Positions 3,167 to 62,697 of a stretch of DNA of 64,000 bases are shown piece after piece; position 1 is the first letter of the stretch, and the number at the start of each line of letters is the position of its first letter. The DNA lies in assembly GCF_026571515.1 (NCBI RefSeq), contig NW_026859247.1, positions 1-64,000 on the forward strand, written 5' to 3'. A program made the translations under genes and the position numbers. Origin of the DNA: Ruditapes philippinarum (lineage: Eukaryota). The notes beneath the pieces are model-generated. The model did no database searches and was not told where the DNA came from. It saw only the letters and a list, made by a program, of their open reading frames with translations.

Positions 3167-5860
3167 TCAGCCAATAATACTAGGCTCGTTCAAACTGAAA
3201 GATAAACAAATGATCTCATTAAAACGCAATAACATTCTACAGATATTCAGTCATATTTTTATTTAATCTTAAGTTGATCTAAATCGGCAGAAAAAATATA
3301 ACATTAAGAGAACCATAGCCTTAACAGATTTCTTACATCGACTTACTGAGGCTCTTAAAACGGAAGGAAATGCGGATTTGTGTCATTCTTAACCCGAGTT
3401 ATTGGTCCAAGAAATATCAAACTGTATATCAATATATGAGCCGCGTCATGACAAAACCAACATAATGGGTTTGCGACCAGCATGGATCCAGACCAGCCTG
3501 CGCATCCGCGCAGTCTGATCAGGATCCATACTGTTCGCTATCAGTTTCTCTACTTGTAATAGGGTTGGTAAGCGAACAGCATGGATCCTGATCAGACTGC
3601 GCGGATGCGCAGGCTGGTCTGGATCCATGCTGGTAGCAAACCCATTATGTTGGTCTTGTCGTGACGCGGCTCATATAGAAAGTTCAGTCCCTTTATGACA
3701 AAGTCTCACAGCTAAGCCCCCAAAAGGTGACGATGAAGGTAATAGAAGTTATAACACATCCGTACCTCTGTTCACAAATGAAAAATGATTTTCGGTCACA
3801 GTGATAATCGTGCCATGTGTATGATTCATGACCCCAAAGGCATGCGCAGTCTTGGTTATTTTTATCACTCGTTTCTGGTTGCCCTGGATACCAATTGGTA
3901 TAACCATTGGAGAGGAGTGTGCGGTCAGTATACCATACCCATATTCCTTCAATCTCTCCATCTGTTGCACCCAGCCAAAACCAGTTGTCTCTTTTGGTGG
4001 CTGTTGTTATGAAAAATATTAAATTGCACTAGGATATGTTATTTTAAAGGGACAAATATATCTGATGTGTTTCATGAAACTAAATAAAACTCAAAATGAA
4101 TTTATATGCGACCATATATAGTTCCTCACACTTAATCACAGTTTCGTTATATAGTTCTGGTACTTCTGGATCATTCTCATTACTGGTTCAAATTCTAAGT
4201 GGTTAAGATTTCAAACACTGCATAAAAGACACAAAGAATGATTCACTTTACATTTCCTCACATGAACTGACTGAATCAATCGAAAATGTAAAGCTCGGGA
4301 AATTGCTTGTCTTGTCATTGGTCTCGGAGACTCTTTTCCATCCAGAATTTATAGATACTGTAATACTGTTTCACTGATTAAAGAAGGTTCCAACACTAAA
4401 TATATCCAGACAAGTGATTAAACAATGAATAAAGTCATTAACAATACAGACAAAATAAGATATTCTACTGGTAAAGAAGTAACATATGATTTGAGGCCTA
4501 CGAAATTATACACACACCACGTGTGATTTTCTAACTATCATAGAGACTGTCAAGCCATCACAAAACAATAGTCGGACGACAGTTGTCTGTCCTATCTATC
4601 ACTTTAATATAATAAGAACCTCTGCGATGTGTTCAATTCTTAATATATCTATCGTGTAAGTCATGAAAGAGTATACTTAACCGTCTTTAAACAATCGCTT
4701 GCTGTGGTTTTGAAGAAATGAAAATTCATCTGGGTTTTCAATTGTCACCACATGCGAACCACCATAAGATGCACAAGTTTGCTGAAATAGTATATGCAAA
4801 CTTGTTCCGAGTTTGTAAGGACAAGTATGATACAATACAATCTGGATTTAAAATTGACAAGATGTTTTGATCATTGACGCCATCACTATTAAGTGTTAAT
4901 AATTGAGTACCTCAAGCTGGTGCTAGAGGCGTGAGGGATGTTGCACATTATCATTATTCCTCATGTACAGACTCAATCAAACCGAGTCTGTGATTTCATG
5001 TAATTTTGTTGTGTTAAATGCTTCCGAGGGAACACACTTTATACAGATTTTTAATGTTTCTCACTAAATGACAAAATCATACATTCTAGATTCAACGTTT
5101 AACTTACAGGAATGCATGTATTCATCATTCTGTTCAAACAATTCATACGGGAATATTTCAGTACAAATATATCAAATGATGAAATACATAGAACAAAAAT
5201 GCAATAGGCGATTGTTAGACTATTAAAGGGTATATTTTTATAACTGTCAGGAACTTAACAAAACTGTTCTTTCTTCTGAAGTCATTGCATTCGTAAAATA
5301 TTATAAAGAGTTTGTTTTTCATGTTAATATGTGTATATCACTCATAAATTTGATGATTAGTTGAAAAAATCTTTAATTTCTTGATTGGTGTAACATAATG
5401 AGTATTTTTTAAAATATTGTTAGCTTTCCCAAATACAAATAACTACAAAAGCATAGATACACTGCTGAGTGTATATCTATCTTACTAATTATTTGAAACG
5501 TACCGTTGCTTCTGTCCAGTTAAGTTGATGGTCTTCGTCAAATAGATAGCAAGATTCTTCGAATGTTATCCACCCATTTTCACAACATGCACCTGTGTTT
5601 TTGATAAAACTGAGATAATGGCAAGCCTTTTTACAACTCATTGAACTTTTAATTTCTCTTTTTTAAAATAAATACACGCAATAGACGGAATTTGAAATTT
5701 TGCTATTTAGGTGCTACTGATCTAAAATTAAGTAAGTTTTTAAAACAAACAACATATTTCATTTAATAAGATAGCTTTGAAAATAATCTAATTTACCCAC
5801 GAAAATCCTACACTGTACAAGAATATATGCAATTATTGTATACAAATAAAGTACTTTCAT
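3167..5860 (-). CDS. C-type lectin (perlucin-like) paralog 1, intact; exons 5860-5797, 5592-5504, 4781-4682, 4000-3766, 3194-3167
   Basis: Spliced product: MKVLYLYTIIAYILVQCRIFVG-ACCENGWITFEESCYLF..WTEAT-QTCASYGGSHVVTIENPDEFSFL..-FWLGATDGEIEGIWVW..YTNWYPGQPE..NQDCACLW..WHDYHCDRKSFFICE-QSLNEPSIIG*. All introns are GT-AG with phases 1,0,1,2. Confidence 0.9.
3433..3677. mobile_element. ~245-bp palindromic MITE in the last intron of lectin 1
   Basis: Near-perfect ~100-bp terminal inverted repeats (tatatgagccgcgtcatgacaaaacc... / ...ggtcttgtcgtgacgcggctcatata) with TA-rich ends; non-coding. Confidence 0.9.
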
Positions 5861-7359
5861 TGTACAAACTAAATGATCATACCAAAATGCTCTAATCATT
5901 TAATAAACTTTGACATCTATCGCAAACTTGACACTAGTCGTACAAAGATAAGAAACAGTTCTAATATGTCGTTATTTAAGCCTATTTCTACGCTAGAGTG
6001 TACAATATTGGAATACATATTGACGAGGACAAAGTTATAAAATACCATATTGTAAGAGCATTCAAATAATGCTTTAAAGAGCTTAAACCATTCCGTATCC
6101 CGTTTCAATGCTGGAAAAGCAAAGTTAACCAACATAATTATTTGATTAATTATCTCATTTATTGGCCTTCTTAGAAGAGTGATCGTTCCTGAAATGAGGA
6201 CTAGAAAGGCACCGAGACCTTCATCCGTAGTCGCCATATGACATTATACAATATAAAACACGTTTGCTTAATTTTTATTAATGGGAAAAGTTAACAGGTT
6301 TTTTCAGTTACCTGCCCAATGAACATACACGTTCCTCTAATATTGTTAATGAGGGTATGAGGGTGACCCTTTCAGAAACATAAACGAAGTGACAGGAAGG
6401 CGGAAACTGTTTAAATTAATCATTTATAGCGCAAATACATGTTTATTCATAGCGCAGATATAATAGCCAATAAAATATCTTTGGAAAGTAGAATAGGAAA
6501 AAAAGAATCCCTAAGAACGTCCAAAACGACAGAATTGAGGAAAAAAATAGTGCAGACTTGGTTTTAACTGAGTCTGATCATAGAGGGTACTAAAAAATGC
6601 AAGCTACCGTCTACGCCCCCTAGGCAAAATTTTAACATTAAAGCATAAAAATGTGTTCAAACTTTAGTTAAAATGGCACCTGCAAGTAGACAAATTCGTC
6701 TTTTGCCACGAAAAGCAGCGTTTGGAAGTTTTTTGCCCTTACTGAGAACACAATGGGCGAAAATTTAAAAAAAATGAATTTTGCAAGGTCACTGTACATT
6801 CGCTATTTACAGGTAAAGGAAAACAATGAATAAACAAGTTTGAGACAGAAAATTAGTTCATAAGATTAGTACGCTAAAAGAAACAAAAAATAAGATATAA
6901 AGGGAACGTTAAAAGAAGTTTACTACACATTTCTATGTTAAAGCAACTATGTGTTGAATGATTCCGGTCACATTTAGATATTAATTGTCATATGGTATTG
7001 TAAACATAGCATTAACATGCCTAATACAGTATATTGTGATCGAAACCATTCATATAAAAATTATTTACTTATTGCAGTTCACAAACATGTTTAGCAAGTA
7101 TTACAAAAAAGGTTAATAAAATGCAACAAGGTGTTCAAAAATAAAAAAAAGATCATCAAGACTTGTAAGTAGCATTATAAAAAAAATATTTTATAAACAT
7201 GTACTATGGAATGATCATCTGCTATCTCTTTGGAAACATGTTCATTATTTAAATTATTTCTATTAAATATCATAAACAGTTTGTTAATGATACTTGTGAT
7301 TTTTTTTGCAGACAGACTACGCTCTGTTGTTATTAATTATTGGTCAGCAGCCATCAGTT

Positions 7360-10771: not shown

Positions 10772-10925
10772 NNNNNNNNNNNNNNNNNNNNNNNNNNNNN
10801 NNNNNNNNNNNNNNNNNNNNNNNNNNNNNNNNNNNNNNNNNNNNNNNNNNNNNNNNNNNNNNNNNNNNNNNNNNNNNNNNNNNNNNNNNNNNNNNNNNNN
10901 NNNNNNNNNNNNNNNNNNNNNNNNN
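10772..10925. other. Assembly gap (N run)
   Basis: Run of N bases. Confidence 1.
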
Positions 10926-19573: not shown

Positions 19574-21386
19574 TCAACCAGAATCTTTTTTGCTCTTTAG
19601 CCGTGGTTGTGCTAGACAAAAACATTAATGTACTTGTAAAGTAACAATACATGTACAGTTATTGTTATTAAATATTTGGTTGAATGAATGTTAATTTGTA
19701 CTGATTTCTTTTTCAAACACAAAAATGATGTATGGTTTAATGCTTATATAAAGTTTCACTTAAATGTTTTAGTTCTTTAAAAGTAATTGTGCTTATTTAA
19801 GTCGATGTTAAACAATTATATATCTGAAACCATAATCAGATTTTTTAAGAAAAGAGTAACTATCATACAATGATTATAATATACAATGATTATAATATTT
19901 ATATTTTTATTTTATAATTTAAAAGAAATACATCGTCTTACTTGCTTTTTCTCACACATAACATGTGATTTCAGTTCACAATGGTGATCGTGCCAGGTAT
20001 AACCAGATTTTCCCCAAAGAACGGCACAATCTTGATTATTTGCATTAGTTGGTTGCCCTGGATACCAGTTGGTGTATCCATCAGTGATTGGTTTATGATT
20101 TGTGTACCAGGCCAATATTCCTTCAATTGCGACGTCTGTTGCCCCAACCCAAAACCAATTAGACCTCGAAGCTCCTGTAAAATATTTCAATGATAGTTAC
20201 GAATAAATACTAGACCTATGTGTATAAACCTCATTTCTTGTATAAAATTCATTTTTAACATGTTAATCCTAAACTCAGCGACAATCAGAAACACTGAATC
20301 CACTCATGATTACAAGTTAAACATTGGTGTTCACTGTAAATTTCTATAATAACATTTTAAATGAACTATCTGAACGACCTAATGTTCCAATATAAATCAT
20401 ACTTGGACCAACCTTATCAATTGAGCCTCGTTTTCATTACAAAAAAAAACCGTTTAAAATGACAGTTGTACTCAATGTAGCCTCACTTTCATTTTCCTAA
20501 GCCAAAACATCAATATCAAATTCATACTGTACTCTATCAAGCCTCGTTTTCATATTCCGAGTCCAAAAGTTCCTTGTCAATTTCATATTACACACGCAGT
20601 AGCAACTGTATCTTTAATATAACACATCAACAGTGTTCAATGTGCGCTTTCTTAAATATTAAATATACTTTGTCGCCATTAAAATTTGTAATTAAATTGA
20701 AATAAATAAAAGTGGAAACCTGTCTTGAATAAACGTTGGCACTGATCACGGAGAAACAATTCCTCTGAACGAGACTCTACTGTCACAATGTGAGAATGAT
20801 CGTGCGTATCGCAAAAATCCTAAAAATAACAAGTTGACGTTCATTTTTCAATCTAGAAAATCGTAATATAGTTTCAATGACTTAAAGAACTTCTTTGCAA
20901 TTTTATACATGTGCGACATATCGTCTTAAAGTTTTAAAGAAATATTTTGGCATTTTAATCATTAAAACAATAGAAGACGGAGTCTGTTTTTCACATTGCT
21001 CCTGCTCAGCCATTTGAATATATTTATATAATAGATACTATTTTATGCATATATAAATTTTGTTTCATTGTTTGAGAGGTTTTTGATTTAATATATATTT
21101 TTACAAATTTGTATTATAATCAGGACAAAAAGAGTATTCCTTTTATCAATATTTCACATAATGCATCTGCTTAACATTACTTTACTTTAACTTTACTCTA
21201 AACAACATGTTGAAAATATTGGAGTTTTTTTATAAGTTAGTAATAAACATCATTAATTCTGTACTTGAAAATTTTGAATCTTAATTAAACTAAGTTAATT
21301 CAAATGTACTTGACCATTGATTATGCCGTGATCATCTAGAATACAAGCTAACACTAGAATATCCGGATATATTGGAACTTCATCAT
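19574..21386 (-). pseudogene. C-type lectin paralog 2, probable pseudogene; exon remnants 21386-21315, 20819-20720, 20174-19946, 19611-19574
   Basis: Close homology to paralog 3 (DFCDTHDHSHIVTVESRSEELFLRDQCQRLFKT; NWFWVGATDVAIEG..WHDHHCELKSHVMCE). Exon 1 is 5 nt longer, giving an early TAG. No exon-2 equivalent (CC..GW..SCY) is present. The exon-4 donor is GC at the homologous position, and the last exon has +1 nt. Confidence 0.8.
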
Positions 21387-21729
21387 ACGTGTTGTCTCCA
21401 ATTTTTTATTCCAATCAACTTAAACAAATTCTGTATCAACTTAGACTCATGCTGTTGAAGCTTTACCTTTACTAATTGTTCTGAATTCAAATGAAGACAC
21501 GCAGGCAATACAAACATACTAACAATGGAGTTCATGAGTTTAAAAAATCTAGTACACTCGACACGCAATTCCTCTTGTCGTTGGTGATTTTTAGATAAGT
21601 AGAAACAAAAGGAGATATAAATGTATTCGGAATTTTTGTAACCACCGCATAACAGCAAAGAAAAAAACGATTTCTTATATTTCAACAAAAAGTTTGAAAA
21701 ACGATGGTGCAATGGACCATGAAGAAAAA

Positions 21730-22635
21730 GAAGATGATGATGATGGTGGTGATGGCGGTGGGGTGAGGATAATGGTGGTGGTTACGGTGATTTATAATGA
21801 TGATCGTGGTGGTGTTGATGATGCATGATGGTGATGACGATGATGATGGTGGTGATGATGGAGGTGACAATGATGGTACTGAATAGTCATGATGATGATG
21901 ATGATGAAGCTGGTAATGGTGTGATGATAATTATGTTGGTGATGGTGATGATGGTTGATGGTGGTGGATGATGATGGTGGTGATGGTGATGATGATGATA
22001 CTTATATTCATGATGATGATGATGAAGCTGATGATGATGATGATGGTGGTGTTGATGATGGTGGTGGTGGTGGTGATGATGATGATGATGGTGATGATAA
22101 TGATGGTTGTGATGATGTTGATGGTTGTGGTTATGATGGTGGTGGCTGATGTTGATGGTGGTGATGTTGGTGGTGGTGATGATGATTTATGATAGTGGTT
22201 GGTAGGGTGATGATGATGATGGTGGTGGTGGTGGTGGATGATTTGGTGGTGGTTGTTGATGATAATGATGGCGTGGTTGTGGTGGTGATGGTGGTGTTAA
22301 TGATGGAGGTGGTGACGATGATGGTTTTGTTACTCATGATGATGATTATGGTGGTGATGATGATGGTGGTGGTGGTGATGATGATGGTATTGATAGTCAT
22401 GATGATTATGATGATGATGATGATGGTGATGAAAATGTTGTGGTGTTGATAGTCGTGACGATGATGATCAATTGTTTCTTGGGAGAATGATATTTGTTTT
22501 TGTAATTATGATGTTGTTGGGGATTATTTGGTAATAATAATGATGGTGATGGTGGTAGAGGGAGTGGTGGTTACAATGATGATGATGATGGTTGCGGTGA
22601 GGATGGACAGTTGTTTTGATGATGGGTGGTGATTA
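21730..22635. repeat. Degenerate (GAT/GGT)n trinucleotide low-complexity tract
   Basis: Mixed gat/ggt triplets; the overlapping poly-M/V/D/G and poly-I/T/H ORFs are artefacts. Confidence 0.95.
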
Positions 22636-25070: not shown

Positions 25071-27728
25071 TTTAAAAACAAAACTAAAACAAAACAAACA
25101 AAAACATCAACAATATCAAAAACAACAACAAAATATTTTTCATTTGCGCTTGATTACGAGTATAATCACATTGCATCAATTTTGCCTTAAATATCAAAAT
25201 AAATGCCCAAATATTTCTTGCAATTTGCAACAAAAAACTTATGATTGTTTGCTTTAAAAATAACGTGATGAAAATTATTTTATGTGTTTTATGTAACATA
25301 AATACATTGGATTTTAAAATTTTACGTGGGTTGTCCCAATATTCTCTGATAAGATTGTTTAAAAGCTAAATAAAATAGGTATGAATTTGATATTTTAATA
25401 TGTTATAAAACCATATAATTAAAACATTTACACAAATTTACATAGAAAAATATAAACAAACAACAAAAATATGCCATAAACTCCATGGCAACTAACTGAA
25501 TCGCGGTGCACGTCAAACGTCAAAGACGGCGTTAAATCTATATATAAGACGCCTTTCTCAAATATTCTCAATGACTTAAAACGCAACAATGGTACCCATA
25601 AACCATCAATTACAGACTTAAATCATGTGGTTTTTAATGTCTGTTGAATGTTTGGATGGCATACATTAATGCAATACGCGAACTTCCGGTTTCGTTGCAC
25701 CTGCATTTAGCTGTGGAAATAGGCGACAAAGATCGGTCTTCCGTGTTTGCCTTATTTTCGCTTTTTGTAGCGGAAAACGTTGATTCCGTGCATGCCTTTA
25801 GTAAACAAATGCTCATGATATGTTGCCAAACTGTTACATTTGGTATATTTGTTGAAAATCGTAACATGTGTTATCTCGAAATAGTCATGAAACTTAAGTG
25901 ACCTGTTCACTACGCCGCAAATTCTTCGAACGTCGCCATTTTAACTTTCCTATTTTATACGAGATATTTTCATTTATTCGTATCTTTTTCGTTTCTTAAG
26001 TTATTTAAATTAAATTTTCTGAGATGATTTAAACATAGCAGCAGAGAAAGTCAACGTGACATTGTGCACACACATCATCAGATATTTGAAATATACGTAA
26101 TTAATTTTAGCCTATTCATAACTAAATGCAAATTATTTGACGTGCGCCGGCAACTCAAACCAATGTCGTTAATACTGCAAATTTCTAAGTAACTAAAGTA
26201 TTCTTTTTTGTAAATGATTCGTTGTTATGTTAAATAAACGTAACGGTTATGTGTGTGAATTATTTTCTATTGACGTTAAAAATGAACCGTCTATAAAATT
26301 TTCCCAAATTAATGTCGGTCTAGACCAATAACTTGTTAGATTGTAATTTTAGATCATTGGCTCTACTCTAAATATGAACAAAATTAAAATGCGTTGCAAC
26401 TCAAACCGAGCTGAGAATTGCATAAAAAATACACTTTTCAATTAATTTCTGGGTATAATTTTTAATCATGTTTAGCATTTATTTCTGTTCAAGAGGGTCC
26501 AAGCTAATCCAAATTCAAATTTTATGTTTTAGGAGTTCGGACATCAGTGGAGTTCCTTTAAGATGCATAACTATTTTAAAGTGATTTGGTCTTTCAAGAA
26601 GTGTTTCAATTAAAATGTTGATAAGACGATAAAAATGTATCATTTGGATACATATATACAATAGTTCTTTACAACTTATAAAATCTTAGCAGGTAATATA
26701 TCCACATATATCACCCCAAAACCAAAATAATAATTTTATTACCCTTCCCCTGCCGAGTTTAGACGATTTTTTAAAAAATAATTGCTGTTTCAAATGAAAC
26801 GTCGAAATAAGATTCCCTTTAAGATACCTCTTCATCACAACATGACGTCACATAAATACATGACGTATTTTTCCAGTACCTAACGAATGTAAACAAGAGA
26901 AAAGGAGTAGTCTATTGAAAGCACTTTTTTGTAATTAATATCAAGCTTTCACAAGGTCATTTTTGTTTTCAATACTGATGGGAATTTGTATCATTACTCT
27001 ACTTTGGTAAATATTTATCATTTGACTGTTAAAAAGTGCTTGTATATCGGAATTTACACCGCGTAAAATCGAACCGTACGCGCATCACCTCAGCGCATGT
27101 CGTTTACAACGTTGGGTACCCAACGGGGAAATTTAGTGTGTATATTACCCGTCTGGCTCGGTTATATCAATTTCTTTCGGGTGATCAATATCCAATCAAA
27201 AAGGCGGAAAAAATCTGGAAGGGTAATAAAACAATTTATTATCTGCTATATATTAAATTTGTCATCTTGGATCATGTATCTTTCAATTACAGACATCACC
27301 CATGCATAGTTATTTCGAGGTTTTACGTTATGGTCGATACTTAATTCTGTCAACGTGATTCTTTATGGTAAAAGAACCTTCCATTATAGACCAATTCACT
27401 TTAAAGATCAGTTTATTTCTTTATTTAAAAAAAAAATCTGCTTAATAATAATTGCAGTTTAAATTTTAAATCAACTTCAGCATTGTCATCTTACAACATG
27501 CTTGATAGTGTCTGCATTTTACTATACATGCTTACTCATGTATACTGTATAGACACAGCATTTGTAGTGTTTGAAATGTTTTATTTCATATTACCATTTT
27601 TCACCCTAAAACGAAACTGAATGGTAAATTCAAACGTTTGAAAGAAAAGAGTATTAAAATGCATAATTGTATTTATACTTCGTCTCATTTTATTTTCAAA
27701 AAATACAGAAAAATCATTTCTTTCTGCA

Positions 27729-30700
27729 TCAACCAAATATTTCCTGCTCTCTAGAAGCTGTTATGCTAGAAAACAAGAACATTAATTTATACAATAAATA
27801 TATATATATTTAATCAAATTAGAAATTTTAGATTTTTATTCGAATATATGAACGAATACATGAACAAGAAAACAATATTTCTATTCTGCGTTGAATGTTT
27901 TTTTGACATGAAGTTCTGATGTTATCTGAGATTATTCATTATTGCACATGAAATAACAAACATTAATTTGAAAAATGAACCATAAGGAAAACACTCATTT
28001 TTGTTCTTAAAGCTAAGAGTCAAAGTTTGTTTAAAAGTTTTTATTACAACTATCATATAACGTTAACTATAATAAGATTTTTTTATATAATCAAAGAGTC
28101 ATGGTTTAACATAACGTTTGACTTACTTTCTTTCGCATATTACATGTGATTTTAGGTCACAAATATGATCTTCCCAAACGTAACCATTTGGTCCCCAAAG
28201 AACGGCACAATCTTGATTCCAGTCTGCTGGATCTGGTTGTCCTGGAGCCCAGTTGGTGTATACATCAGTGATTGGTTTATGATTCGTGTACCAAACCCAT
28301 ATGCCTTCAATTTCGTCGTCTGTTGCCCCAATCCAGAACCAATTATCCCTCGAAGCTCCTGTTGATTTTTTAATGACAGGAATTTTCATGATTTCGGATA
28401 AATACAATTTAGGCTTGTCTGTTTGTATCTCAAGTACCTCAAATATTGTACTGTACAACTGTTAGTTTGTGTAACAGCATAATTTGGGGTCATAATTCTT
28501 TATGAACGTTTAAACTTAATTGTTTGCAGTTATAACGACCGACAATATATTCATGGGAAAAATTATGTGTAATTGTTTTTCATAAAGATATAAATTAACT
28601 CAACCCTGTCGTTGTAAATACAAATACTGGTACAATCATATTTTAAATACGCATTTTGTTTCAACGTTTTTGTTGTGATTGTATAATTACACGAACTTTG
28701 TTGTTATTATTACTATTATTATTATTATAATCGCTTAGGTTTTACAATCTGTGCAAGGAATGTTATTGGCCGATAGGGAAGTGGGCCTGTATAGAACAGT
28801 AAATACATTACAAAATCCATTTGAAAAAATATTAAGTTAATTAACTTTTAAGTCTTTAACTTTGTTTGTTGTTACAATTTGTTAGAAATTCATATAAATG
28901 AAATGGAAACCTGTCTTGAATAAACGTTGGCAGTGATCACGGAGAAACAATTCCTCTGAACGAGATTCTATCGTCACAATGTGAGAATGGTCGTGTGCAT
29001 CGCAGAAATGCTTAAAATAAAAACACAGATTTTACATCTAGAAAATCTTAAAAATGGTTCATTTACTTCAAAGAACTTCTTTGCAACAATAACTGTCTGT
29101 GCAACTTAATACATGTATATTGTATTATGCAAAAAAACGTACAAAATCCTCTGTTTTGCGGAAAACTATTCTGAATATGTCAATGAAAAACAAAAAACTT
29201 CTTTTTATGTAGCAATTGAAAAAAGAAAATATGTTACCGTTGCCTCCGTCCAGTCAACGTTTGTATGATCTGCAAACAGGTAACACGAGTCCTCATAAAC
29301 AACCCATCCATTTTGACAACATTTGTATCCTTAAAACATATCAAATGAAATGATATAATTAAAGAATAAACTATACCTACCTTGAAGTTAAAGTTCAATT
29401 ATTATTATACTTCAAGTGAACCACAGGGTTTAATGAGATGAACATATGATCTTATCTGATGACCAAGCAGACTTTCAGAGCGTACATAATTATGCAAAAT
29501 GCGACAATGGATTCTTCATATTGAAGGGGTAGCCGGACGGGCTTTAAGCCATGTGGTCCAGTACAAGTAGAATAATAATTGAACTTCCAGGCAAGTCTCG
29601 TTTTATTTATTTATTGTACTGTACTGGATCACCTAGGGTTAATGAGATTTTAGAGACTTCGCTTACATTTTGATAAGCCGTTAAAACTACATAACCAAAT
29701 ACAATGATTACTCATTCAATTCAAAACTATTAACTAATCAACTGATAATATAATGTACAAAATACGATGTGCAATAGCCATTTACATAAAAATCCTGTAA
29801 AAGTAACCAGCATTATAAGAGTTTTCTACTGTACAGAACATATGAAAGGAAAAGCTCATAACACATGATTTGACCCCTGCTGCATGGGTAATCAATATTG
29901 CATACTCTTAACAAAAAATCGCCAGTAAGTTTAACACACATACATGCTGCATATTATCTGTCGTATGTATATTTCTTAAGCAATTCACTTCAGCAATTCA
30001 TCCACACCTTTTTTTCTCTTTTTTTTTAAATTTTGCATTTCAGCAATTTTGAGTTTCTAAATCAGTACAACTCAAAATACAAAAAAATGGTCACAAAACA
30101 TAGTTATATCAATAACCAAAGCTTGCCATCGATATTAAGTGATGTACACTCAAATGATATTTCTGTGTAGGTAAAGGATATTCTGTTCAAAGCTTTCTAT
30201 GGTTTTCTATGGTTTTCCAGCAATTCTTTTGTACCCCATTGATTAATTTATGTGGCTTTAAAATATTCCAAAGAATTTTGATATTTTGATATCTTGCAAA
30301 ATCAAACCTTTTCTTTGATTGTTTTGATATTACTGATTTTGCGGTTAAAGGGCCATTAAGCCTTCTTATGCACTAATTCATTTATATTGTTGTTTTTCTC
30401 TTTGTGTCGTCTAAAATATTCCAAAATGTTACTCATTATGTCAATACTTAATCGGTTTACTTTTTATAGTCAGTTGCTTTAAAAAAAACTTGAACAACAC
30501 CTTATGACCGCAGATTTAATTATATTCCCCGTCAATGAAAAGTTTAGTACCACATGCATATACATGTATAAAGATTTAATACAGCATTAATTTAATTAAC
30601 TGCCATTTCTTCCGCCACCTTTAGAACATTTCTAGTCTAAAAAATATGAATGCGCTCATCAAACGTCCATAAATAGAAATGTTTTTAGACTAAATAACAA

Positions 30701-32773: not shown

Positions 32774-33149
32774 ACCATGCTTACGTATTGTCTGCAAAAT
32801 ATTTTATTCCACCTTTGCTTATCACTGACAGCTCATTAATGTTAACAAAATCTGGTACACTCAAAAATCATTAATGACATTAGTGACGTATTTGCAGTAA
32901 ACTTCCCATTGTTGTCTGGTGTTAGTGGGTGGGTGGGGAGGTTCTTTTAAATAATAAGAAAACAAACGAAATATGAATGTCGCTTGGATTTTGTAATCAC
33001 CTAATTACAAAGCGATCACTTCGATGCAAAACTCAACGCATTCTAAAACTAATTAAAAAAATAGGCTTCTTATATTTCAACAAAGACGATAGAGATGTCT
33101 TTGAAGAAGATGATGATGATAGTGGCGGTGGTGAGATTGGTGTAGGTGG

Positions 33150-35990
33150 CGGTGGTGATGATGATTGTGGTATTGATAGTATTAACAGTGGTGGTGAGGA
33201 TGATACAGGTGGTTATAGAGGTGGTGATGATGATTGTGGTATTGATAGTATTAACAGTGGTGGTGATGATGATACAGGTGGTTATAGAGGTGGTGATGAT
33301 GATTGTGGTATTGATAGAATTAACAGTGGTGGTGATGATGATACAGGTGGTTATAGACGTGGTGATGATGATTGTGATATTGATAGAATTAACAGTGGTG
33401 ATGATGATACAGGTGGTTATAGAGGTGGTGATGATGATTGTGATATTGATAGAATTAACAGTGGTGGTGATGATGATACAGATGGCTATAGAGGTGGTGA
33501 TGATGATTGTGGTATTGATAGAATTAACAGTGGTGGTGATGATGATACAGGTGGTTATAGAGGTGGTGATGATGATTGTGGTATTGATAGAATTAACAGT
33601 GGTGGTGATGATGATACAGATGGCTATAGAGGTGGTGATGATGATTGTGATATTGATAGAAAATAACAGTGGTGGTGATGATGATACAGATGGCTATAGA
33701 GGTGGTGATGATGATTGTGATATTGATAGAATTAACAGTGGTGGTGATGATGATACAGGTGGTTATAGAGGTGGTGATGATGATTGTGGTATTGATAGAA
33801 TTAACAGTGGTGGTGATGATACAGGTGGTTATAGAGGTGGTGATGATGATTGTGATATTGATAGAATTAACAGTGGTGATGATGATACAGGTGGTTATAG
33901 AGGTGGTGGTGATGATTGTGGTATTGATAGAATTAACAGTGGTGATGATGATGATACAGGTGGTTATAGAGGTGGTGATGATGATTGTGGTATTGATAGA
34001 ATTAACAGTGGTGGTGATGATGATACAGATGGCTATAGAGGTGGTGATGATGATTGTGATATTGATAGAATTAACAGTGGTGGTGATGATGATACAGATG
34101 GCTATAGAGGTGGTGATGATGATTGTGATATTGATAGAATTAACAGTGGTGGTGATGATGATACAGGTGGTTATAGAGGTGGTGATGATGATTGTGGTAT
34201 TGATAGTATTAACAGTGGTGGTGATGATGATACAGGTGGTTATAGAGGTGGTGATGATGATTGTGATATTGATAGAATTAACAGTGGTGATGATGATACA
34301 GGTGGTTATAGAGGTGGTGATGATGATTGTGATATTGATAGAATTAACAGTGGTGGTGATGATACAGGTGGTTATAGAGGTGGTGATGATGATTGTGATA
34401 TTGATAGAATTAACAGTGGTGATGATGATACAGGTGGTTATAGAGGTGGTGATGATGATTGTGGTATTGATAGAATTAACAGTGGTGATGATGATGATAC
34501 AGGTGGTTATAGAGGTGGTGATGATGATTGTGGTATTGATAGAATTAACAGTGGTGGTGATGATGATACAGGTGGTTATAGAGGTGGTGATGATAATTGT
34601 GGTATTGATAGAATTAACAGTGGTGGTGATGATGATACAGGTGGTTATAGAGGTGGTGATGATGATTGTGGTATTGATAGAATTAACAGTGGTGGTGATG
34701 ATGATACAGGTGGTTATAGACGTGGTGATGATGATTGTGATATTGATAGAATGAACAGTGGTGGTGATGATGATCAGGTGGTTATAGAGGTGGTGATGAT
34801 GATTGTGATATTGATAGAATTAACAGTGGTGGTGATGATGATACAGATGGCTATTGGAGGTGGTGATGATGATTGTGGTATTGATAGAATTAACAGTGGT
34901 GGTGATGATGATACAGATGGCTATAGAGGTGGTGATGATGATTGTGATATTGATAGAATTAACAGTGGTGGTGATGATGATACAGATGGCTATAGAGGTG
35001 GTGATGATGATTGTGGTATTGATAGAATTAACAGTGGTGGTGATGATGATACAGGTGGTTATAGAGGTGGTGATGATGATTGTGATATTGATAGAATTAA
35101 CAGTGGTGGTGATGATGATACAGATGGCTATAGAGGTGGTGATGATGATTGTGATATTGATAGAATGAACAGTGGTGGTGATGATGATACAGGTGGTTAT
35201 AGAGGTGGTGATGATGATTGTGATATTGATAGAATTAACAGTGGTGGTGATGATGATACAGGTGGTTATAGAGGTGGTGATGATGATTGTGGTATTGATA
35301 GAATTAACAGTGGTGGTGATGATGATACAGGTGGTTATAGAGGTGGTGATGATGATTGTGATATTGATAGAATTAACAGTGGTGGTGATGATGATACAGA
35401 TGGCTATAGATGTGGTGATGATGATGATTGTGGTATTGATAGAATTAACAGTGGTGGTGATGATGATACAGGTGGTTATAGAGGTGGTGATGATGATTGT
35501 GGTATTGATAGAATTAACAGTGGTGGTGATGATGATACAGATGGCTATAGAGGTGGTGATGATGATTGTGGTAATGATAGAATTAACAGTGGTGGTGATG
35601 ATGATACAGATGGCTATAGAGGTGGTGATGATGATTGTGATATTGATAGAATTAACAGTGGTGGTGATGATGATACAGATGGCTATAGAGGTGGTGATGA
35701 TGATTGTGGTATTGATAGAATTAACAGTGGTGGTGATGATACAGGTGGCTATAGAGGTGGTGATGATGATTGTGATATTGATAGAATTAACAGTGGTGAT
35801 GATGATGATACAGATGGCTATAGAGGTGGTGATGATGATTGTGATATTGATAGAATTAACAGTGGTGGTGATGATGATACAGGTGGTTATAGAGGTGGTG
35901 ATGATGATTGTGGTATTGATAGAATTAACAGTGGTGATGATGATGATGATGAAACAGGTGGTTATAGAGGTGGTGATGATGATTGTGCTG
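33150..35990. repeat. Tandem minisatellite, 69-bp unit built from GGT/GAT triplets, ~41 copies
   Basis: Unit ggtggtgatgatgattgtggtattgatagaattaacagtggtggtgatgatgatacaggtggttataga; it translates as GGDDDCGIDRINSGGDDDTGGYR in one frame. Confidence 0.95.
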
Positions 35991-36372
35991 GTAATGGTGG
36001 TTGTGAAAGTAATTTGGCGGTGAAAGTGGTGATCGTAGTTCGTATTTTTACCTTTCAGCTGTTCCACTACTAAGGCGTAACTGTGGAGGCTTTGAAATAA
36101 CCGTTTTGTTCAAAAAGAAAGGTAAAGGCACAAGGTGGGGGTATTTAGCATGAATTTACCACCTTATATAAATTTACAAAGAATTTGTTTGGCTTAAAGT
36201 CAGATTCCCCGTTTTTTTGCGGGGTATGTTAATTGAGCATAAAACAAGATTAATGAAAGAAAGACGGTCATGATAACCGTATATAAGTCTTCTAAATTCT
36301 CATGTTTAAGTGTACAAATTGATGCTATGTTTAAATAGTTTGAAACATTATAAGCTTCAAAAGTTTTCATTT

Positions 36373-37657: not shown

Positions 37658-37817
37658 NNNNNNNNNNNNNNNNNNNNNNNNNNNNNNNNNNNNNNNNNNN
37701 NNNNNNNNNNNNNNNNNNNNNNNNNNNNNNNNNNNNNNNNNNNNNNNNNNNNNNNNNNNNNNNNNNNNNNNNNNNNNNNNNNNNNNNNNNNNNNNNNNNN
37801 NNNNNNNNNNNNNNNNN
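37658..37817. other. Assembly gap (N run)
   Basis: Run of N bases. Confidence 1.
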
Positions 37818-56783: not shown

Positions 56784-57222
56784 TTAACCAATGATATCGA
56801 TTTCAGGGAAGGTTTGTCTCAATAAGAACCCAGAAAAAAATACTGAGTCCATGGCCCCAGAGGCTTTCAGCCTTTGCTTCTCTACCAACAACCGACACAT
56901 CATCACCTTTATGTAATTCGTAAATGACAGTAAGAGATCTCGTTTCACCTCGAAGATACTAGAATTGGATATAGTCCCTATCTTCTTAAAGAATAGTCTC
57001 CGGTACTTGAATCATAGTATGTCATCAAAGATATTGAAAATATGTAAATGCCACGCACAGGTGCTCTTAAGTGTGGGTTGTAGCCATTTCCGACGTTTGT
57101 GACGACGTGTTCAAACACAATGAATTGATTGACTCCAGTATTGACGTAATGATTTTGAATTGTGAAAAAGACTGCAACTACTGCATCGATCTCATGTTGA
57201 AGCATTCTATCATTTCTTCCAC
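56784..57222 (-). pseudogene. C1q-domain pseudogene (duplicated globular-domain exon only)
   Basis: Homologous to 61064-61512, including the 3' flank. It has a 9-nt deletion (AGDF>L), two 1-nt deletions producing TAG after SLRR, and +1 T downstream. It ends ..EIDIIG* in the ancestral frame. No signal/coiled-coil exon is seen upstream. Confidence 0.85.
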
Positions 57223-58228
57223 CTGAAAATCATGGCGAACAAAAAAACATAGATAGATAATTAAAATAAAAGATAAGGATCAAATCTTGTGATAAAGTTT
57301 GCTCTCTTGAAATGTTTAAAATGTACATTCTCAAAAATATTGAAGTTTAATACTTTTCATCAAATTTTTGTACTCATTCATGTAACACTTTATAATTCTG
57401 ATAAATTATTTTGAACATCGCATTTTTAATTCAATTTATATCTCATTTAAGGATATAAATGAATGTCGATTATGTCGCGAATTCGTCTCTATACTACATG
57501 AATGACGATCGACATCGGCAAGATTGTCCTTAAAAAATGATTTTTGTATAGGCGTGTGTTTTTTTTCTTCTAAATATTATTACTTGACATTTACTTAGCG
57601 TCATACATGTGAACGCAAGTTTGAATGTTATTTTGGAGAATGAGAATAGAACCATAAATTTTGTATTCACGACCTCTTATTAAGGAGTTCAGTGCTTTAA
57701 TATACACTAGGAAACCTTCGTACCCCTATAACAATTATTAATCAAAATAAACTATTCTAAACTAATGGTTAATCTTTCACATTACATCAAGTTGTTTATG
57801 AAGTTGTTAAATATCGATATAATATACTCTTTCTTTATTGATTTTGCCCTACGTAGAATGCGCATGAACGAAATGCAACATCCGTTTCTATGGAAAATTT
57901 GTATCGTATAAAGGCATTTATGCTCATAGGCAAACAATTTGTTGAACTCTTATGTTTAGAATCTTTTGTAAAGTAAGGTGAGAAAATAAATTTCAGGGGG
58001 GGGGGGGGGGCAGGGGCGGGGGTTGTGCTAAAATATAGCCCTGTATGGTGTTTAGATGTGCAGTTATATAATCACGGATGCCGTAGGCCTACAAACATCT
58101 GAACAACAAATTGTGCTTTATGTATAACACAGAGCAAACCAAACCAAGATGTTTTCCATTCTTACACGTCAAGAAAACTATAGTTAGATTGTTGGTGTTA
58201 AATTTGTTCTCGCTTCAGTGTTATTAAT

Positions 58229-58617
58229 ATTAACGTTGTTGAAAGGCTTTTTTATTGTGGCTGATTTGGAACGATTTTGTGCGTCGTGTTGGCGCTAGCG
58301 ACAACAGGACAAAGCGCCAAACGGGGCGAGTTGCCGGACTTTCATCTTGTTGTCCTGTCGCAAACAATGTAAGCCAAACGGCGCGTTGCCGTGCGGCGTG
58401 TTGTTGCGATGTCACATTGTCGAAGAATTGGCTTATAAGCCAAGCGACAGGGTGAGATCGCAACAACGTGCTGCACGACAACGCGCCGTTTGGCGTGCTT
58501 TGCTAGATACAGGACGACAGCGCGACAACGCGCCGTTTAGCGGTTTTTGCACGCGCTGTTCGGCGCTGCATTATGACGTCACGTCAACAACACTTCATAC
58601 GTCTGTACAGCGTTAAT
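58229..58617. mobile_element. CpG-rich MITE nested in the foldback element
   Basis: Termini attaacgttgt / acagcgttaat. Internal inverted pair gccaaacggcgcgttgccgtgcggcgtgttgttgcgat / atcgcaacaacgtgctgcacgacaacgcgccgtttggc. Confidence 0.7.
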
Positions 58618-58666
58618 GAATGAAGGTGTTTGTGTTTAAGTTTGTAAACTTTCTATCATTCCAGAT

Positions 58667-59017
58667 ATAGAGGATATTGAATGAGTGTAAGTTCAATACT
58701 GAATTTTTTGCACGAGTTGAACAAAATTATATTATGCGAGCCTCTGGCGAGCATAATATTATTTTATTCAACGAGTGCAATAAATTCAGTAATGAAGTTA
58801 CACGAATTTAATATTCTATTTATCACATACCCAAACTAAAGATCGTTTAAGGTAAAATAAGAGTCATCTTTCATTGACTCTTCTATAGTATAACGCTAAC
58901 ATTTAGCGCGTCTTTACACTATGTTTGAATAACGCTAATGACGTCACGTCAAAATATATGCACGGCCGTGCAATACCATATTTACGGAGTCGCAAAATCG
59001 GCACGGGTGTGTGATAA
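58667..59017. mobile_element. AT-rich hairpin MITE (58667-58819) plus adjacent ttatcacat...gtgtgataa-bounded segment
   Basis: ~70-bp arms around gcgagcctctggcgagc; short inverted ends ttatcacataccc / gggtgtgtgataa. Confidence 0.7.
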
Positions 59018-61063: not shown

Positions 61064-62697
61064 TCAACCGATAATTTCAGTTTCAGGGTGGATTTGTCTT
61101 AATAAGAACCCAGAAAAAATACTGTATCCATTACCCCAGAGGCTTTCAGCCTTTGCTTCTCTACCAACAACCGACACATCGTCCCCTTTATTTAGTTCGT
61201 AAATGACAGTAAGAGATCCAGTGACACCGCGAAGATACATAGAATTGGATATGGTCCCATTTCTTCTTATAGAATAGTCTCCGGTAGTTGTATCATGGTA
61301 TGTCATCAAAGATACTGAAAATACGTAAATGCCGCGCACAGGTGCTCTAAAGTCTCCCGCGTGTGGGTTGTAGCTATTTCCTACGTTTGTGACGACGTTT
61401 TCAAAAATAATGACTTGATTGACTCCAGTATTGACGTAATGATTTTTAAGAGAGGCGGAGAATGCAACTACTGCCTCGATCTGATTTTGAAGCATTCTAT
61501 AACTTCTTCCATGTAGAATATATAGTACTTATCATAACAACTAAAAAAGATAATAAAAATCTTATTAACAGATTATAATAAAAGCAAAATCTAGTAAAAA
61601 AAATAATTTCCTTGTTTTATTAAACGAACTATATGTAGTAGATTTAAAATGGCATAGATTTATTTTACAATTAAATTTTGATCGTTTTTTTATGTTTTAT
61701 CCGAATCAAGTACAATAAATCAATCACGAGCACCTCAATTCCAGAGTATTTATTTGGATAAATATTAAAAACGTTATATTTAAATGACTATTGAATATCA
61801 AAACAAAATGGTGGACGTTTTATTTTGTTTGTTTGTATTATTAAACGTAAAGAGTTTATACTGTATTGTATTAATATTTGTTTACACTTTAAAAATAATA
61901 AAGGTCGGTTTTAGCACTTTGCAATGTTTAGAGTTATACTTTGAGGTTGAGCTGTCTGATATATCAGAACATAATCATTGCCTATCGCATTGGCCAACAA
62001 ATCTTATCTCAGTTTATCAACCAACACCAGGTATATACATGAATGTTTTGACTTTTCAAGACTCTATATGATTTAATGTCATTTTTCCAAATGTATTCGA
62101 TCTAAAAAGTAATATAAACTAATTCAATTGAATAACATGCCCACCTTATATTTATGGTAATTATTGTCTATCTCTAAATTTTTGTCATTTGTACTTATCG
62201 AAAATAAATAATGATTTACCGAATGTGCGTTTTCGTCCTTTTCCCATCAAATGAGCTTGCGAATTCATTTCATTTGGTTTACTGATTATTTCTGTGACCA
62301 AGTCCAAATCATCATGACCAGGTCTCACCACATTTCGCTTAGTCACTGCATCATCTGAATTCACGTCTGTCGAATTCTTCTTTTGTTTCAAATTTGACTG
62401 TGGAATTGTGCATCGCTTTTCAAGTTCAGATAGCCTTTCCTCGCGTTGTTTGTCCCTTTTTTCAAGTTCAATTATGCGCTCCTTCAACAGCTGATTACGT
62501 TCATGCTCCTGTTTTGTTAGACTTTCTACAGCTTCCAACCGATCAACAAGTGTTCTGATCAAAGCATTTTCTTTCGAACTAGATCCTAAAAGTTCATTCT
62601 GCTTAGGTTCAAGCTTGTTTTGACGTGATGAGTGTTCAAAGCCGTTTGCATTGATCTGTTCTAAGCATGCACAGACTAGTACGAACAGGATAACCAT
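61064..62697 (-). CDS. Secreted C1q domain-containing protein (signal peptide + coiled coil + gC1q); exons 62697-62220 and ~61512-61064
   Basis: Exon 1 has the signal MVILFVLVCACLEQINA and a coiled coil (LVDRLEAVESLTKQEHERNQLLKERIIELEKR). Exon 2 is gC1q: VAFSASL..IIFENVVTNVGNSYNPHAGDFRAPVRGIYVF..YELNKGDDVSV..YSIFSGFLL. The canonical exon-2 AG acceptor is missing in this assembly, so functionality is uncertain. Confidence 0.8.

What the first reader, a model, noticed from the sequence alone, without database searches (positions are those of the whole stretch)
3167..61075. Shared C-terminal I-[I/F]-G-stop tag on unrelated secreted lectin families
Seen: lectin 1 ends EPSIIG*, lectin 3 EQEIFG*, the C1q protein ETEIIG*, and the C1q pseudogene EIDIIG*. 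That is E-x-x-I-[I/F]-G-COOH on two non-homologous folds. In the C-type lectins a dedicated tiny last exon (28-37 coding nt) supplies it. The neighbouring Kunitz, 4-TM and GTPase proteins lack it. Known: a C-terminal Gly is the substrate of peptidylglycine alpha-amidating monooxygenase, and C-terminal tags can act as sorting signals. Inference: this is a shared trafficking, amidation or docking signal for a class of secreted recognition proteins, possibly an undescribed system. Only two independent families are represented here.
Basis: partly seen in the sequence, partly recalled or inferred. Interest (0 to 1): 0.8.

Follow-up and report, generated by a model that had tools for sequence, protein, structure and literature searches.

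The report
Shared hydrophobic-Gly end on clam lectins
Two unrelated families of secreted clam immune lectins carry the same short C-terminal ending (two hydrophobic residues, then glycine, sometimes followed by Lys or Arg-Lys), which looks like a signal for C-terminal amidation and which I did not find described in print.

Summary
All four ends are in the window on the minus strand. Lectin 1's 28-nt last exon matches a public Ruditapes philippinarum protein model. Lectin 3's 37-nt last exon is joined exactly as predicted in spliced contigs of two public runs. Lectin 2 has lost the ending through a 1-nt insertion.

In this genome, 33 of the 150 scored C1q domains end Φ-Φ-Gly, followed by nothing (12), Lys (17) or Arg-Lys (4). 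Of the 39 tails of 9 or more residues, 33 carry this ending; of the 111 shorter tails, none does. In public proteins, 85 of the 120 best-listed C1q relatives carry it. So do C-type lectins of Mercenaria, Dreissena, Mya, Mactra and Mytilus. Fibrinogen-type (0 of 20) and TNF-type (0 of 19) genes lack it.

Both tails are modelled as flexible, outside the folded domain. The best reading (confidence about 0.45) is a secretory processing signal: basic residues are trimmed and the Gly is converted to an amide. Nothing here shows the chemistry.

My paper searches found no description of this ending. First readers of this scan noted similar endings elsewhere in this genome, on another lectin cluster and on esterases. 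My limited esterase check gave no support.

The parts
3167..3194 (-). Lectin 1 terminal microexon: 28 nt including the TGA stop at 3167-3169. It supplies the third base of the Ser codon, then LNEPSIIG-stop.
   Evidence: Acceptor AG at 3196-3195 and the reading are seen. It is identical to the end of public protein P0007.
3766..5899 (-). Lectin 1 upstream exons, approximately 5795-5899, 5504-5596, 4680-4781 and 3766-4001. They encode the hydrophobic N-terminus and the C-type lectin domain. The donor AG|GT lies at 3766/3765.
   Evidence: tblastn of P0007 on the window gives 97-100% identity per exon. Pfam Lectin_C matches at E 5.4e-12. Sequence.
19597..19611 (-). Lectin 2 terminal microexon as used by the public model: HNHG-stop. 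It is homologous to the microexons of lectins 1 and 3, but a 1-nt insertion and a phase-0 donor (CAA|GT at 19942/19941) have removed the Φ-Φ-Gly reading.
   Evidence: Sequence, alignment. P0090 ends ...MCEKKQHNHG.
19942..20813 (-). Lectin 2 C-type lectin domain exons, about 20724-20813 and 19942-20193. No match to the first lectin-domain exon was found upstream, and the public model starts inside the domain. This is probably a truncated copy.
27673..27765 (-). Lectin 3 terminal exon. The coding part is 27729-27765 (37 nt including the TGA stop): the third base of the Asn codon, then ITASREQEIFG-stop. The rest is 3' untranslated sequence, covered by a spliced contig as far as 27673.
   Evidence: Joint 27765|28127 (skips 361, CT..AC on the plus strand, which is GT..AG on the minus strand) in X1 (93 letters on the shorter side) and X2 (22 letters). 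Sequence.
28127..29329 (-). Lectin 3 C-type lectin domain exons 29238-29329, 28910-29010 and 28127-28357. The first exon, further upstream, was not resolved.
   Evidence: Joints 28357|28910 and 29010|29238 in X1, X2 and X4. Pfam Lectin_C matches at E 1.2e-10. tblastn.
56784..57229 (-). C1q pseudogene. The domain is broken by an in-frame stop, a 3-residue deletion and at least two frame changes. The relic tail reads ...RQTFPEIDIIG-stop in its own frame.
   Evidence: (partial C1q, profile positions 5-59; three separate alignment pieces in different frames, one containing a stop).
61064..61527 (-). C1q gene, exon 2. The C1q domain lies at 61100-61465. The 11-residue tail RQIHPETEIIG lies at 61067-61099. 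The TGA stop lies at 61064-61066. The acceptor AG at 61529-61528 is inferred from the reading phase only.
   Evidence: Pfam C1q at E 6.3e-20, profile 1-127 on residues 22-143. Sequence. 62% identical to Mercenaria protein P0001, which ends ...NLVGRK.
62220..62697 (-). C1q gene, exon 1 (inferred). ATG at 62697-62695, hydrophobic N-terminus MVILFVLVCACLEQINA, a charged helical-looking stalk, and donor G|GTAAAT at 62220/62219 (phase 1).
   Evidence: Open frame, sequence. No transcript evidence was gathered. The two exons were never joined for any tool.

Best explanation
The ending is a short linear signal added behind the folded domain. It consists of a polar or acidic spacer of about 6-10 residues, then two hydrophobic residues (mostly Ile, Val or Leu), then Gly, then nothing, Lys, Arg or Arg-Lys.

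It sits on a large subfamily of secreted bivalve C1q-domain proteins, where it is encoded in the same exon as the domain. It also sits on perlucin-like and other C-type lectins, where in this window a dedicated microexon encodes it.

The most likely mechanism is the classical secretory-pathway route known for neuropeptides and antimicrobial peptides. A carboxypeptidase removes the trailing basic residues. Peptidylglycine alpha-amidating monooxygenase then converts the exposed Gly into an amide. The mature lectins would end in Ile-, Val-, Leu- or Phe-amide.

Shown here: the motif, its conservation in two families and several genera, its use in transcripts, and its position outside the fold.
Inferred: the processing itself.
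Unknown: what the amidated end is for. Candidates are protection from exopeptidases, or a docking or sorting epitope.
For: 1. C1q in this genome. The search gave 1233 candidate C1q matches, of which 150 were scored. I read each of the 150 through to its stop.
- 33 end [IVLFM][IVLFM]G[KR]{0,2}.
- Tails are bimodal. 111 have 8 residues or fewer, and none of these is tagged. 39 have 9 or more residues, and 33 of these are tagged. Two more end EP[FV]G and one ends VVVGRI. Fisher p = 2e-27, treating paralogs as independent.
- After the Gly come nothing (12), K (17) or RK (4).

2. Codons (on the 33 tagged tails). The Gly uses all four codons (GGA 19, GGT 6, GGG 5, GGC 3). Positions -4 to -6 carry 7-11 different residues. 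The end is therefore held at protein level, not by recent copying.

3. C1q in public proteins. A profile of 27 domains with the tails cut off found 268 proteins at E <= 1e-10 among 846 candidates. Of the 120 listed, 85 are tagged: nothing 47, K 34, R 2, RK 2. Of the 96 with tails of 9 or more residues, 83 are tagged. Named species are Mercenaria, Ruditapes and Mactra.

4. C-type lectins. Of the 150 best representatives found with P0007, 37 end within 25 residues of a lectin-domain Cys motif, and 9 of these are tagged. Of the other 113, 1 is tagged. Fisher p = 1.2e-5. The tagged ones come from Mercenaria, Dreissena, Mactra, Mya and Mytilus. The terminal Gly is invariant in the 16-sequence alignment.

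5. Transcripts and public models use the microexons.

6. AlphaFold models place the tails outside the fold. For C1q the mean pLDDT is 92, the last three residues score 62, and the tail is coil. For the lectin, residues 180-184 score under 50. Solved vertebrate relatives align only as far as FSGFLL or the last Cys-Glu.

7. The genome holds copper-monooxygenase (PF01082) exons, 34 matches. In mussels, a Gly before basic residues is already read as a signal for carboxypeptidase plus the amidating enzyme in myticalin peptides (PMC12294457, passages read).
Against: - No mass-spectrometric or biochemical evidence was available. Amidation of whole folded lectins is, to my recollection, unusual, since the enzyme's known substrates are mostly peptides.
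- PF01082 also matches dopamine-beta-hydroxylase-type genes, so the presence of the amidating enzyme itself was not shown.
- The C-type lectin tags seen here never carry trailing basic residues. The K/RK argument therefore rests on C1q alone, plus one untested first-reader note (s1-793176).
- Trimming of K/RK would also yield a plain Gly-COOH end, so the variants do not separate amidation from a free-carboxyl docking motif.
- The counts treat paralogs as independent, and the public-protein count describes the tagged subfamily (the profile was built from it), not all C1q proteins.
- The lectin model rests on a shallow alignment (16 sequences, mean pLDDT 71). Both models are monomers, so a role of the tail inside a trimer is not excluded.
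Confidence: 0.45

Rival explanations
1. The ending is a docking or sorting motif that works with a free carboxyl end (Φ-Φ-Gly-COOH, after optional trimming of basic residues). A receptor, a granule-sorting factor or a partner protein would recognise it. It could, for example, direct the lectins to storage granules of hemocytes or digestive cells, or let C1q proteins and C-type lectins bind a common adaptor. No amidation would be involved.
For: The conservation, the flexibility of the tail and its position outside the fold fit a short linear motif read by another protein as well as they fit amidation. Sharing between two unrelated folds suggests a common reader. Absence from the fibrinogen-type and TNF-type families suggests a selective route rather than general secretion.
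Against: No candidate reader is known. C-terminal peptide-binding domains that I recall prefer a hydrophobic last residue, not Gly. Tolerance of K, R or RK behind the Gly needs an extra trimming step anyway. After trimming, the amidating enzyme, if present in the same compartment, would be expected to act on a Φ-Gly end.
Confidence: 0.25
2. Two separate family-specific tails resemble each other by chance. Each would be conserved for its own reason, for example packing in the C1q trimer base or at the lectin dimer interface. There would be no shared system.
For: The shared part is only three residues. The spacers differ: C1q often reads [QYF][EQ][DN][FY]S..., while the lectins read S-x-x-E-x-x or similar. 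The gene structure differs: same exon in C1q, microexon in the lectins. Only two families are shown. My esterase check found no third family. The resemblance was noticed after the fact.
Against: In both families the tails fall into two groups. One group is short and untagged. In the other, of 9 or more residues, the Φ-Φ-Gly ending is common: 33 of 39 and 83 of 96 for C1q, 9 of 19 for the lectin representatives. In both families the last residue is Gly, with all four codons in use for C1q. Both tails are modelled as unstructured rather than packed. The background rate of the ending is low: 1 of 113 unrelated C-termini, 0 of 39 in two control families.
Confidence: 0.2
3. The lectin endings are artefacts of choosing a convenient downstream microexon. 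The real proteins would stop at or near the end of the lectin-domain exon.
For: I[IF]G-stop alone occurs about as often as chance gives in the window (6 seen against 3.66 expected). In lectin 3 a stop codon directly follows the domain exon if it is read through.
Against: Spliced contigs join 28127 to 27765 at GT..AG in two runs from different studies. The public model of lectin 1 uses the predicted microexon. The microexons of the three paralogs align. Orthologs and relatives in five genera end the same way.
Confidence: 0.02

Closest known systems
C-terminal amidation signals of neuropeptide and antimicrobial-peptide precursors (Gly, Gly-Lys, Gly-Arg, Gly-Arg-Lys and the like), including mussel myticalins
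   Same: A Gly at the very end or followed only by basic residues, on products that enter the secretory pathway. In mussels a conserved Gly before basic residues is read as a site for carboxypeptidase followed by the amidating monooxygenase (PMC12294457, passages read). A hydrophobic residue before the Gly suits the enzyme, from my recollection.
   Different: Here the carriers are whole folded lectins of about 150-310 residues, in hundreds of genes, not short peptides cut from a precursor. The two residues before Gly are themselves conserved as hydrophobic, which a bare amidation site does not need. No chemistry is shown.
Vertebrate and other C1q/cerebellin/C1q-like proteins and C-type lectin domains with solved structures
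   Same: The same domains. The window's C1q matches PF00386 over the full profile, and the lectins match PF00059. Solved relatives score E 1e-24 to 1e-7.
   Different: The solved relatives align only to the last strand (FSGFLL) or the last Cys-Glu and carry no such tail. Most C1q genes of this clam also end within 8 residues of the domain (111 of 150).
Short C-terminal sorting tags of eukaryotes (KDEL-type ER retrieval, SKL-type peroxisomal signal, GPI-anchor signal)
   Same: A few residues at the extreme C-terminus, shared by unrelated proteins and read by a common machinery. This is what the rival 'docking or sorting' reading proposes.
   Different: The sequence is unlike any of them. There is no long hydrophobic stretch as in a GPI signal, because the tails have 9-14 mostly polar residues. 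The carriers are secreted, not ER-resident or peroxisomal.

Membership tests
C1q domain proteins (PF00386) | Full-length match to the C1q domain profile above the curated cut-off | tested here: met
   window:61067-61528(-) scores 72.1 bits against a cut-off of 23.7, covering profile 1-127. The pseudogene piece scores 26.4 bits over profile 5-59.
C-type lectin domain proteins (PF00059) | Match to the Lectin_C profile above the cut-off, reaching the profile's end | tested here: met
   three last-domain exons score 46.8, 39.1 and 42.5 bits against a cut-off of 22.6, and each reaches profile position 107 of 107.
Substrates of the amidation route (carboxypeptidase, then peptidylglycine alpha-amidating monooxygenase) | Gly at the C-terminus, or Gly followed only by basic residues | tested here: met
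   among 33 tagged C1q tails, the Gly is followed by nothing (12), K (17) or RK (4); among 85 tagged public C1q proteins, by nothing (47), K (34), R (2) or RK (2). The tagged lectins end in Gly.
Substrates of the amidation route (carboxypeptidase, then peptidylglycine alpha-amidating monooxygenase) | The protein enters the secretory pathway (signal peptide) | tested here: inconclusive
   Hydrophobic N-termini were seen by eye only: P0007 ...MKVLYLYTIIAYILVQCRIFVGA and C1q exon 1 MVILFVLVCACLEQINA. No signal-peptide predictor was available.
Substrates of the amidation route (carboxypeptidase, then peptidylglycine alpha-amidating monooxygenase) | The enzyme is encoded in the genome and expressed where the substrates are made | tested here: inconclusive
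   34 exon matches to PF01082 in the genome, but this family also covers dopamine-beta-hydroxylase-like genes. A PAM-like transcript is listed beside C-type lectin and perlucin-like transcripts in a table of a mussel digestive-gland study (PMC4203926, passages). This is a co-listing, not a test.
Substrates of the amidation route (carboxypeptidase, then peptidylglycine alpha-amidating monooxygenase) | The mature product lacks the Gly and carries a C-terminal amide | not testable with these tools
   This needs mass spectrometry of the native proteins.
GPI-anchored proteins | A C-terminal signal with a hydrophobic stretch of roughly 15-20 residues behind a small-residue attachment site (recalled definition) | tested here: not met
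   The tails have 9-14 residues, mostly polar or acidic, with only two hydrophobic residues.

The most novel reading that the evidence does not exclude
Bivalves have an undescribed C-terminal processing system for folded immune lectins. Hundreds of C1q-domain and C-type lectin genes, and perhaps further families such as the esterases flagged elsewhere in this scan, would carry a conserved spacer-Φ-Φ-Gly(-Lys / -Arg-Lys) tag. The tag would be trimmed and amidated. The resulting hydrophobic amide end would serve as a common handle for storage-granule sorting, for protection in protease-rich fluids, or for docking to a shared partner.
Probability: 0.3. Interest if true: 0.8.

Novelty: new variant of a known kind. 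Interest (0 to 1): 0.66.

Why it matters
C1q-domain proteins and C-type lectins are the two largest expanded families of bivalve innate immunity, with hundreds of genes per genome. They are usually described as a signal peptide plus stalk plus head.

A conserved ending shared by large parts of both families, and kept across five bivalve genera (from venerid clams to Mytilus) in the lectins, points to a common maturation or sorting step. The genomic surveys and reviews I searched do not mention it.

If the ends are amidated, this would extend a neuropeptide-type modification to whole recognition proteins. It would also give a simple sequence rule for predicting which lectins share a route.

The question is directly testable by re-searching existing bivalve proteomics data. 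There is also a practical point. In the lectins of this window the tag sits in a 28-37-nt last exon, and lectin 3's domain exon runs straight into a stop codon if read through. A gene caller could therefore miss such an exon.

Tried and rejected
Third family (esterases). I followed first-reader note s1-804451 and searched PF00135 in the genome (87 matches). The large exon of 20 sampled genes ends ...NFAK[TS]G at a splice donor, so the C-terminus lies further downstream. I fetched 3 kb downstream of three genes and found the next exon. I found only one sense-strand Φ-Φ-Gly-Arg-Lys-stop candidate, in L178. The paralog does not conserve it. The result is no support from my sample. The esterases of that note may be other genes.

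C-type lectin tails inside this genome. No in-genome count of lectin microexons was made. The lectin count rests on public proteins.

For C1q, the named species with the tag are therefore only Mercenaria, Ruditapes and Mactra. The two named Dreissena hits have short tails.

Literature. Searches were. Passage look-ups found no mention of a C-terminal tail, extension or amidation in these papers:
- PMC10140915, a bivalve C-type lectin genomics paper;
- PMC12842671, a C-type lectin review;
- PMC10672478, a C1q-domain protein review;
- PMC8905726, the Mercenaria genome paper.
PMC5854119 mentions only deamidation as a search setting. PMC4043741 lists only pattern-predicted sites. The motif word search matched the place name Niigata and was useless. 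Supplements were closed and not asked for. Sequence tables there could show such ends without comment. Subscription-journal papers on mussel C1q proteins are outside the library.

Rejected readings. GPI signal: the tails are too short and too polar. ER retrieval or peroxisomal tags: the sequence is wrong. Glycine-end degrons of the cytosol: recalled from mammals, they prefer other residues before Gly and act in the wrong compartment.

The PDB sequence searches only showed that solved relatives lack the tail.

Full report
WHAT IS IN THE WINDOW. The window has 32.5% G+C and two N runs, at 10772-10925 and 37658-37817. A six-frame scan finds six I[IF]G-stop strings. Pfam confirms three C-type lectin last-domain exons (3696-4028, 19915-20196, 28126-28461). 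It confirms a complete C1q domain in 61067-61528, where the domain ends at residue 143 of 154 and leaves the tail RQIHPETEIIG. It also gives a partial C1q at 56981-57229 and a Kunitz domain at 1786-2094. The second C1q copy carries a stop, a deletion and frame changes, so it is a pseudogene. None of these genes touches an N gap, so continuity across the gaps is irrelevant here.

ARE THE TINY LAST EXONS REAL? Lectin 1's domain exon ends ...TGT GAA CAG AG|GTACGG at 3766/3765. An acceptor at 3196-3195 opens a 28-nt exon that reads (AG)T TTG AAC GAG CCT AGT ATT ATT GGC TGA. A search with the exon translation returned P0007, a public 'perlucin-like protein [Ruditapes philippinarum]' that is 100% identical over the aligned part and ends ...FICEQSLNEPSIIG. 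Its Mercenaria relative P0008 ends ...FICEQSTSEQEIIG. P0007 maps back on five exons of the window. The window is therefore Manila clam or something indistinguishable from it.

Lectin 3's domain exon ends ...GAA AGA AA|GTAAGT at 28127/28126. Read through, it would stop at once. The acceptor at 27767-27766 opens a 37-nt exon giving N-ITASREQEIFG-stop. I laid four public runs on 27600-30600. A 377-nt contig of X1 covers 27673-27765, 28127-28357 and 28910-28963. The joint 27765|28127 skips 361 bases with CT..AC ends, which is GT..AG on the minus strand. X1 shows it with 93 letters on the shorter side, and X2 with 22. The other introns (28357|28910, 29010|29238) are seen in X1, X2 and X4. X1 and X2 are labelled RNA only by guess, but contigs that skip three introns at canonical sites come from spliced RNA. 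Raw-read run X21 gave almost no depth on the gene and adds nothing.

Its public model P0090 ends ...MCEKKQHNHG and starts inside the domain. It looks like a decaying copy.

IS IT MORE THAN CHANCE IN THE WINDOW? I[IF]G-stop alone is not enriched: 6 seen, 3.66 expected, and 52 of 300 block shuffles reach 6. E-x-x-I-[IF]-G-stop is enriched: 4 seen, 0.13 expected, 0 of 300. The two C1q copies are paralogs, and the lectin microexons are homologous. The real test lies outside the window.

C1q FAMILY IN THE WHOLE GENOME. PF00386 gave 1233 candidates in the 1.41-Gb assembly, and the 150 best were scored. I fetched all 150 and read each from the end of the Pfam match to the stop. The tails fall into two groups.
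- 111 have 8 residues or fewer (Y, WET, FETE, NN and the like). None of these ends Φ-Φ-Gly.
- 39 have 9 or more residues. 33 of these end [IVLFM][IVLFM]G followed by nothing (12), K (17) or RK (4). Examples are ARDEWSENIIG, YEDFSSPAVVGK and QQNFSDQAVIGRK.
- The six exceptions are two EP[FV]G, one VVVGRI, one VITV, and two that look frame-shifted.
Fisher's test for long against short tails gives p = 2e-27, counting paralogs as independent, which overstates it. Among the 33 tagged tails the Gly uses all four codons (GGA 19, GGT 6, GGG 5, GGC 3). Positions -2 and -3 each use eight codons, and positions -4 to -6 hold 7-11 different residues. Conservation of the last three positions is partly built into that sample, because it was chosen by the pattern. 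The non-circular figure is 33 of 39 long tails.

C1q FAMILY IN PUBLIC PROTEINS. The first single-sequence search already showed Mercenaria P0001 ending ...NLVGRK, and unnamed P0003 and P0004 ending ...VVGK. To avoid selecting by the tail, I built a profile of 27 domains with the tails cut off and searched with it. It found 268 proteins at E <= 1e-10 among 846 candidates, of which 120 were listed. 85 of the 120 are tagged, with nothing (47), K (34), R (2) or RK (2) after the Gly. Of the 96 with tails of 9 or more residues, 83 are tagged. Several of the 13 exceptions are near-variants (IAVGK twice, IAVG, FPIG) or read-through models. Named sources are Mercenaria, Ruditapes and Mactra. The two named Dreissena hits have short tails. 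Because the profile came from the tagged subfamily, this count describes that subfamily.

C-TYPE LECTINS IN PUBLIC PROTEINS. P0007 against 1.84 billion representatives gave 11952 hits at E <= 0.001. The best 150 are mostly giant multi-domain receptors. By a fixed rule (a Φ-Cys-[EQKRDNH] motif in the last 25 residues), 37 of the 150 end with a lectin domain. Nine of these 37 are tagged, and all nine are among the 19 with 9 or more residues after the Cys. None of the 18 shorter ones is tagged. Of the other 113 proteins, one is tagged. Fisher p = 1.2e-5. The nine come from Mercenaria, Dreissena, Mactra, Mya and Mytilus, plus two clusters (P0093, P0135) from unnamed assemblies. Their ends include ...RPEVVG...DIEVIG...GPDLIG...GGNIIG and ...AAPLVG. 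In a 16-sequence alignment from venerid clams to Mytilus, the final Gly is invariant and the consensus ends IIG. The lectin tag is therefore shared from heterodont clams to Mytilus. None of these lectins has trailing basic residues.

CONTROLS. For fibrinogen-type genes (PF00147: 746 candidates, 150 scored), I sampled 20 from 20 different contigs. None is tagged. 12 stop directly after ...EMK[FLI]R(PK), and the other 8 run on for only 1-7 residues. For TNF-type genes (PF00229: 91 matches), which share the fold of C1q, I sampled 19 from different contigs. None is tagged, and all end within 4 residues of the domain. C1q at 33 of 150 against the controls at 0 of 39 gives Fisher p = 2.7e-4. The ending is therefore not a general feature of secreted recognition proteins or of this genome's stop-codon context.

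WHERE THE TAIL SITS. An AlphaFold model of the window's C1q domain plus tail (81-row alignment) has mean pLDDT 92. The tail is coil, with 85 for residues 121-130 and 62 for the last three. The model of P0007 is weaker (16 rows, mean 71), and residues 180-184 fall under 50. Solved vertebrate C1q-family and C-type lectin chains align only as far as FSGFLL or the last Cys-Glu. Both tails thus look like flexible appendages behind the fold, which is what a short linear signal is. The models are monomers, so they cannot exclude packing inside an oligomer.

WHAT IT MOST LIKELY IS. The common core is Φ-Φ-Gly at the end, optionally followed by K, R or RK and by nothing else. It sits on proteins with hydrophobic N-termini. 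That is the shape of a classical amidation signal: carboxypeptidase trimming of basic residues, then conversion of the exposed Gly by peptidylglycine alpha-amidating monooxygenase. In mussels the same logic is already applied to myticalin peptides (PMC12294457, passages read). The genome has 34 exon matches to the copper-monooxygenase family, but that family is not specific to the amidating enzyme. A mussel digestive-gland study lists a PAM-like transcript beside C-type lectin and perlucin-like transcripts among responsive genes (PMC4203926, passages). That is a co-listing only. I put amidation at about 0.45, a free-carboxyl docking or sorting motif at about 0.25, and coincidence of two family-specific tails at about 0.2. 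Artefact is excluded for lectins 1 and 3. The trailing K/RK does not separate the first two readings, because trimming alone restores a Gly end.

IS IT KNOWN? Seven searches of the paper library and passage look-ups found no mention of this tail. The look-ups covered a bivalve C-type lectin genomics paper, a C-type lectin review, a C1q-domain protein review and the Mercenaria genome paper. Supplements were closed, and subscription journals are not covered, so a passing remark elsewhere cannot be excluded. Inside this scan, first readers noted similar endings on other DNA of the same genome: three tandem lectins with a mini-exon giving -IVG or -IVGRK (s1-793176), esterases ending -[LF]VG (s1-804451), and an -SG/-SGK hidden exon (s1-804702). 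These are untested notes. My own esterase sample gave no support.

VERDICT. I rate it a new variant of a known kind, that is, an amidation-type C-terminal signal on whole lectin families.

Exons were searched apart. Only the public protein P0007 stood for a full lectin.

Noticed in passing
window 3358-3695: The last intron of lectin 1 holds a foldback-like insert. Open frames on both strands give mirror-image translations (…DPDQPAHPRSLIRIHA… and the like), which suggests a small inverted-repeat mobile element.
   Followed up: no
window 32977-36109: About 3 kb of tandem repeat with extreme G-over-C skew (GC skew 0.6 in the 32-36 kb bin). It translates to long GGDDD.../TTIIITT... frames and is almost certainly satellite-like, not coding.
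   Followed up: no
window 21386-22630: A low-complexity stretch that translates to His/Thr/Ile-rich frames lies just upstream of lectin 2, where its first exons would be expected. It may be what truncated that gene.
   Followed up: partly
window 19597-20813: Lectin 2 looks like a decaying copy. No match to the first lectin-domain exon was found. The public model P0090 starts inside the domain. The microexon is shifted by a 1-nt insertion, so the protein ends HNHG instead of Φ-Φ-Gly.
   Followed up: partly
window 28127-29332 (run X4): One X4 contig joins 29332 back to 28127 ('goes back 1206'). X4 contigs also carry many differences from the window. This is probably a chimeric assembly or a paralog or allele from another clam sample.
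   Followed up: no
G000 loci L158-L177: The carboxylesterase-type genes of this genome have one very large exon (Pfam positions about 2-473) that ends ...NFAK[TS]G. In most of the 20 sampled genes a stop from the GTAA-type splice donor follows directly. The rest of the protein lies in at least one further exon a few hundred bases downstream.
   Followed up: partly
G000 loci L010, L015, L017, L018, L036: Some C1q genes with short tails also end in Gly (HSTYSG, QITG) without the two hydrophobic residues. Whether they are related to the tag is unclear.
   Followed up: no
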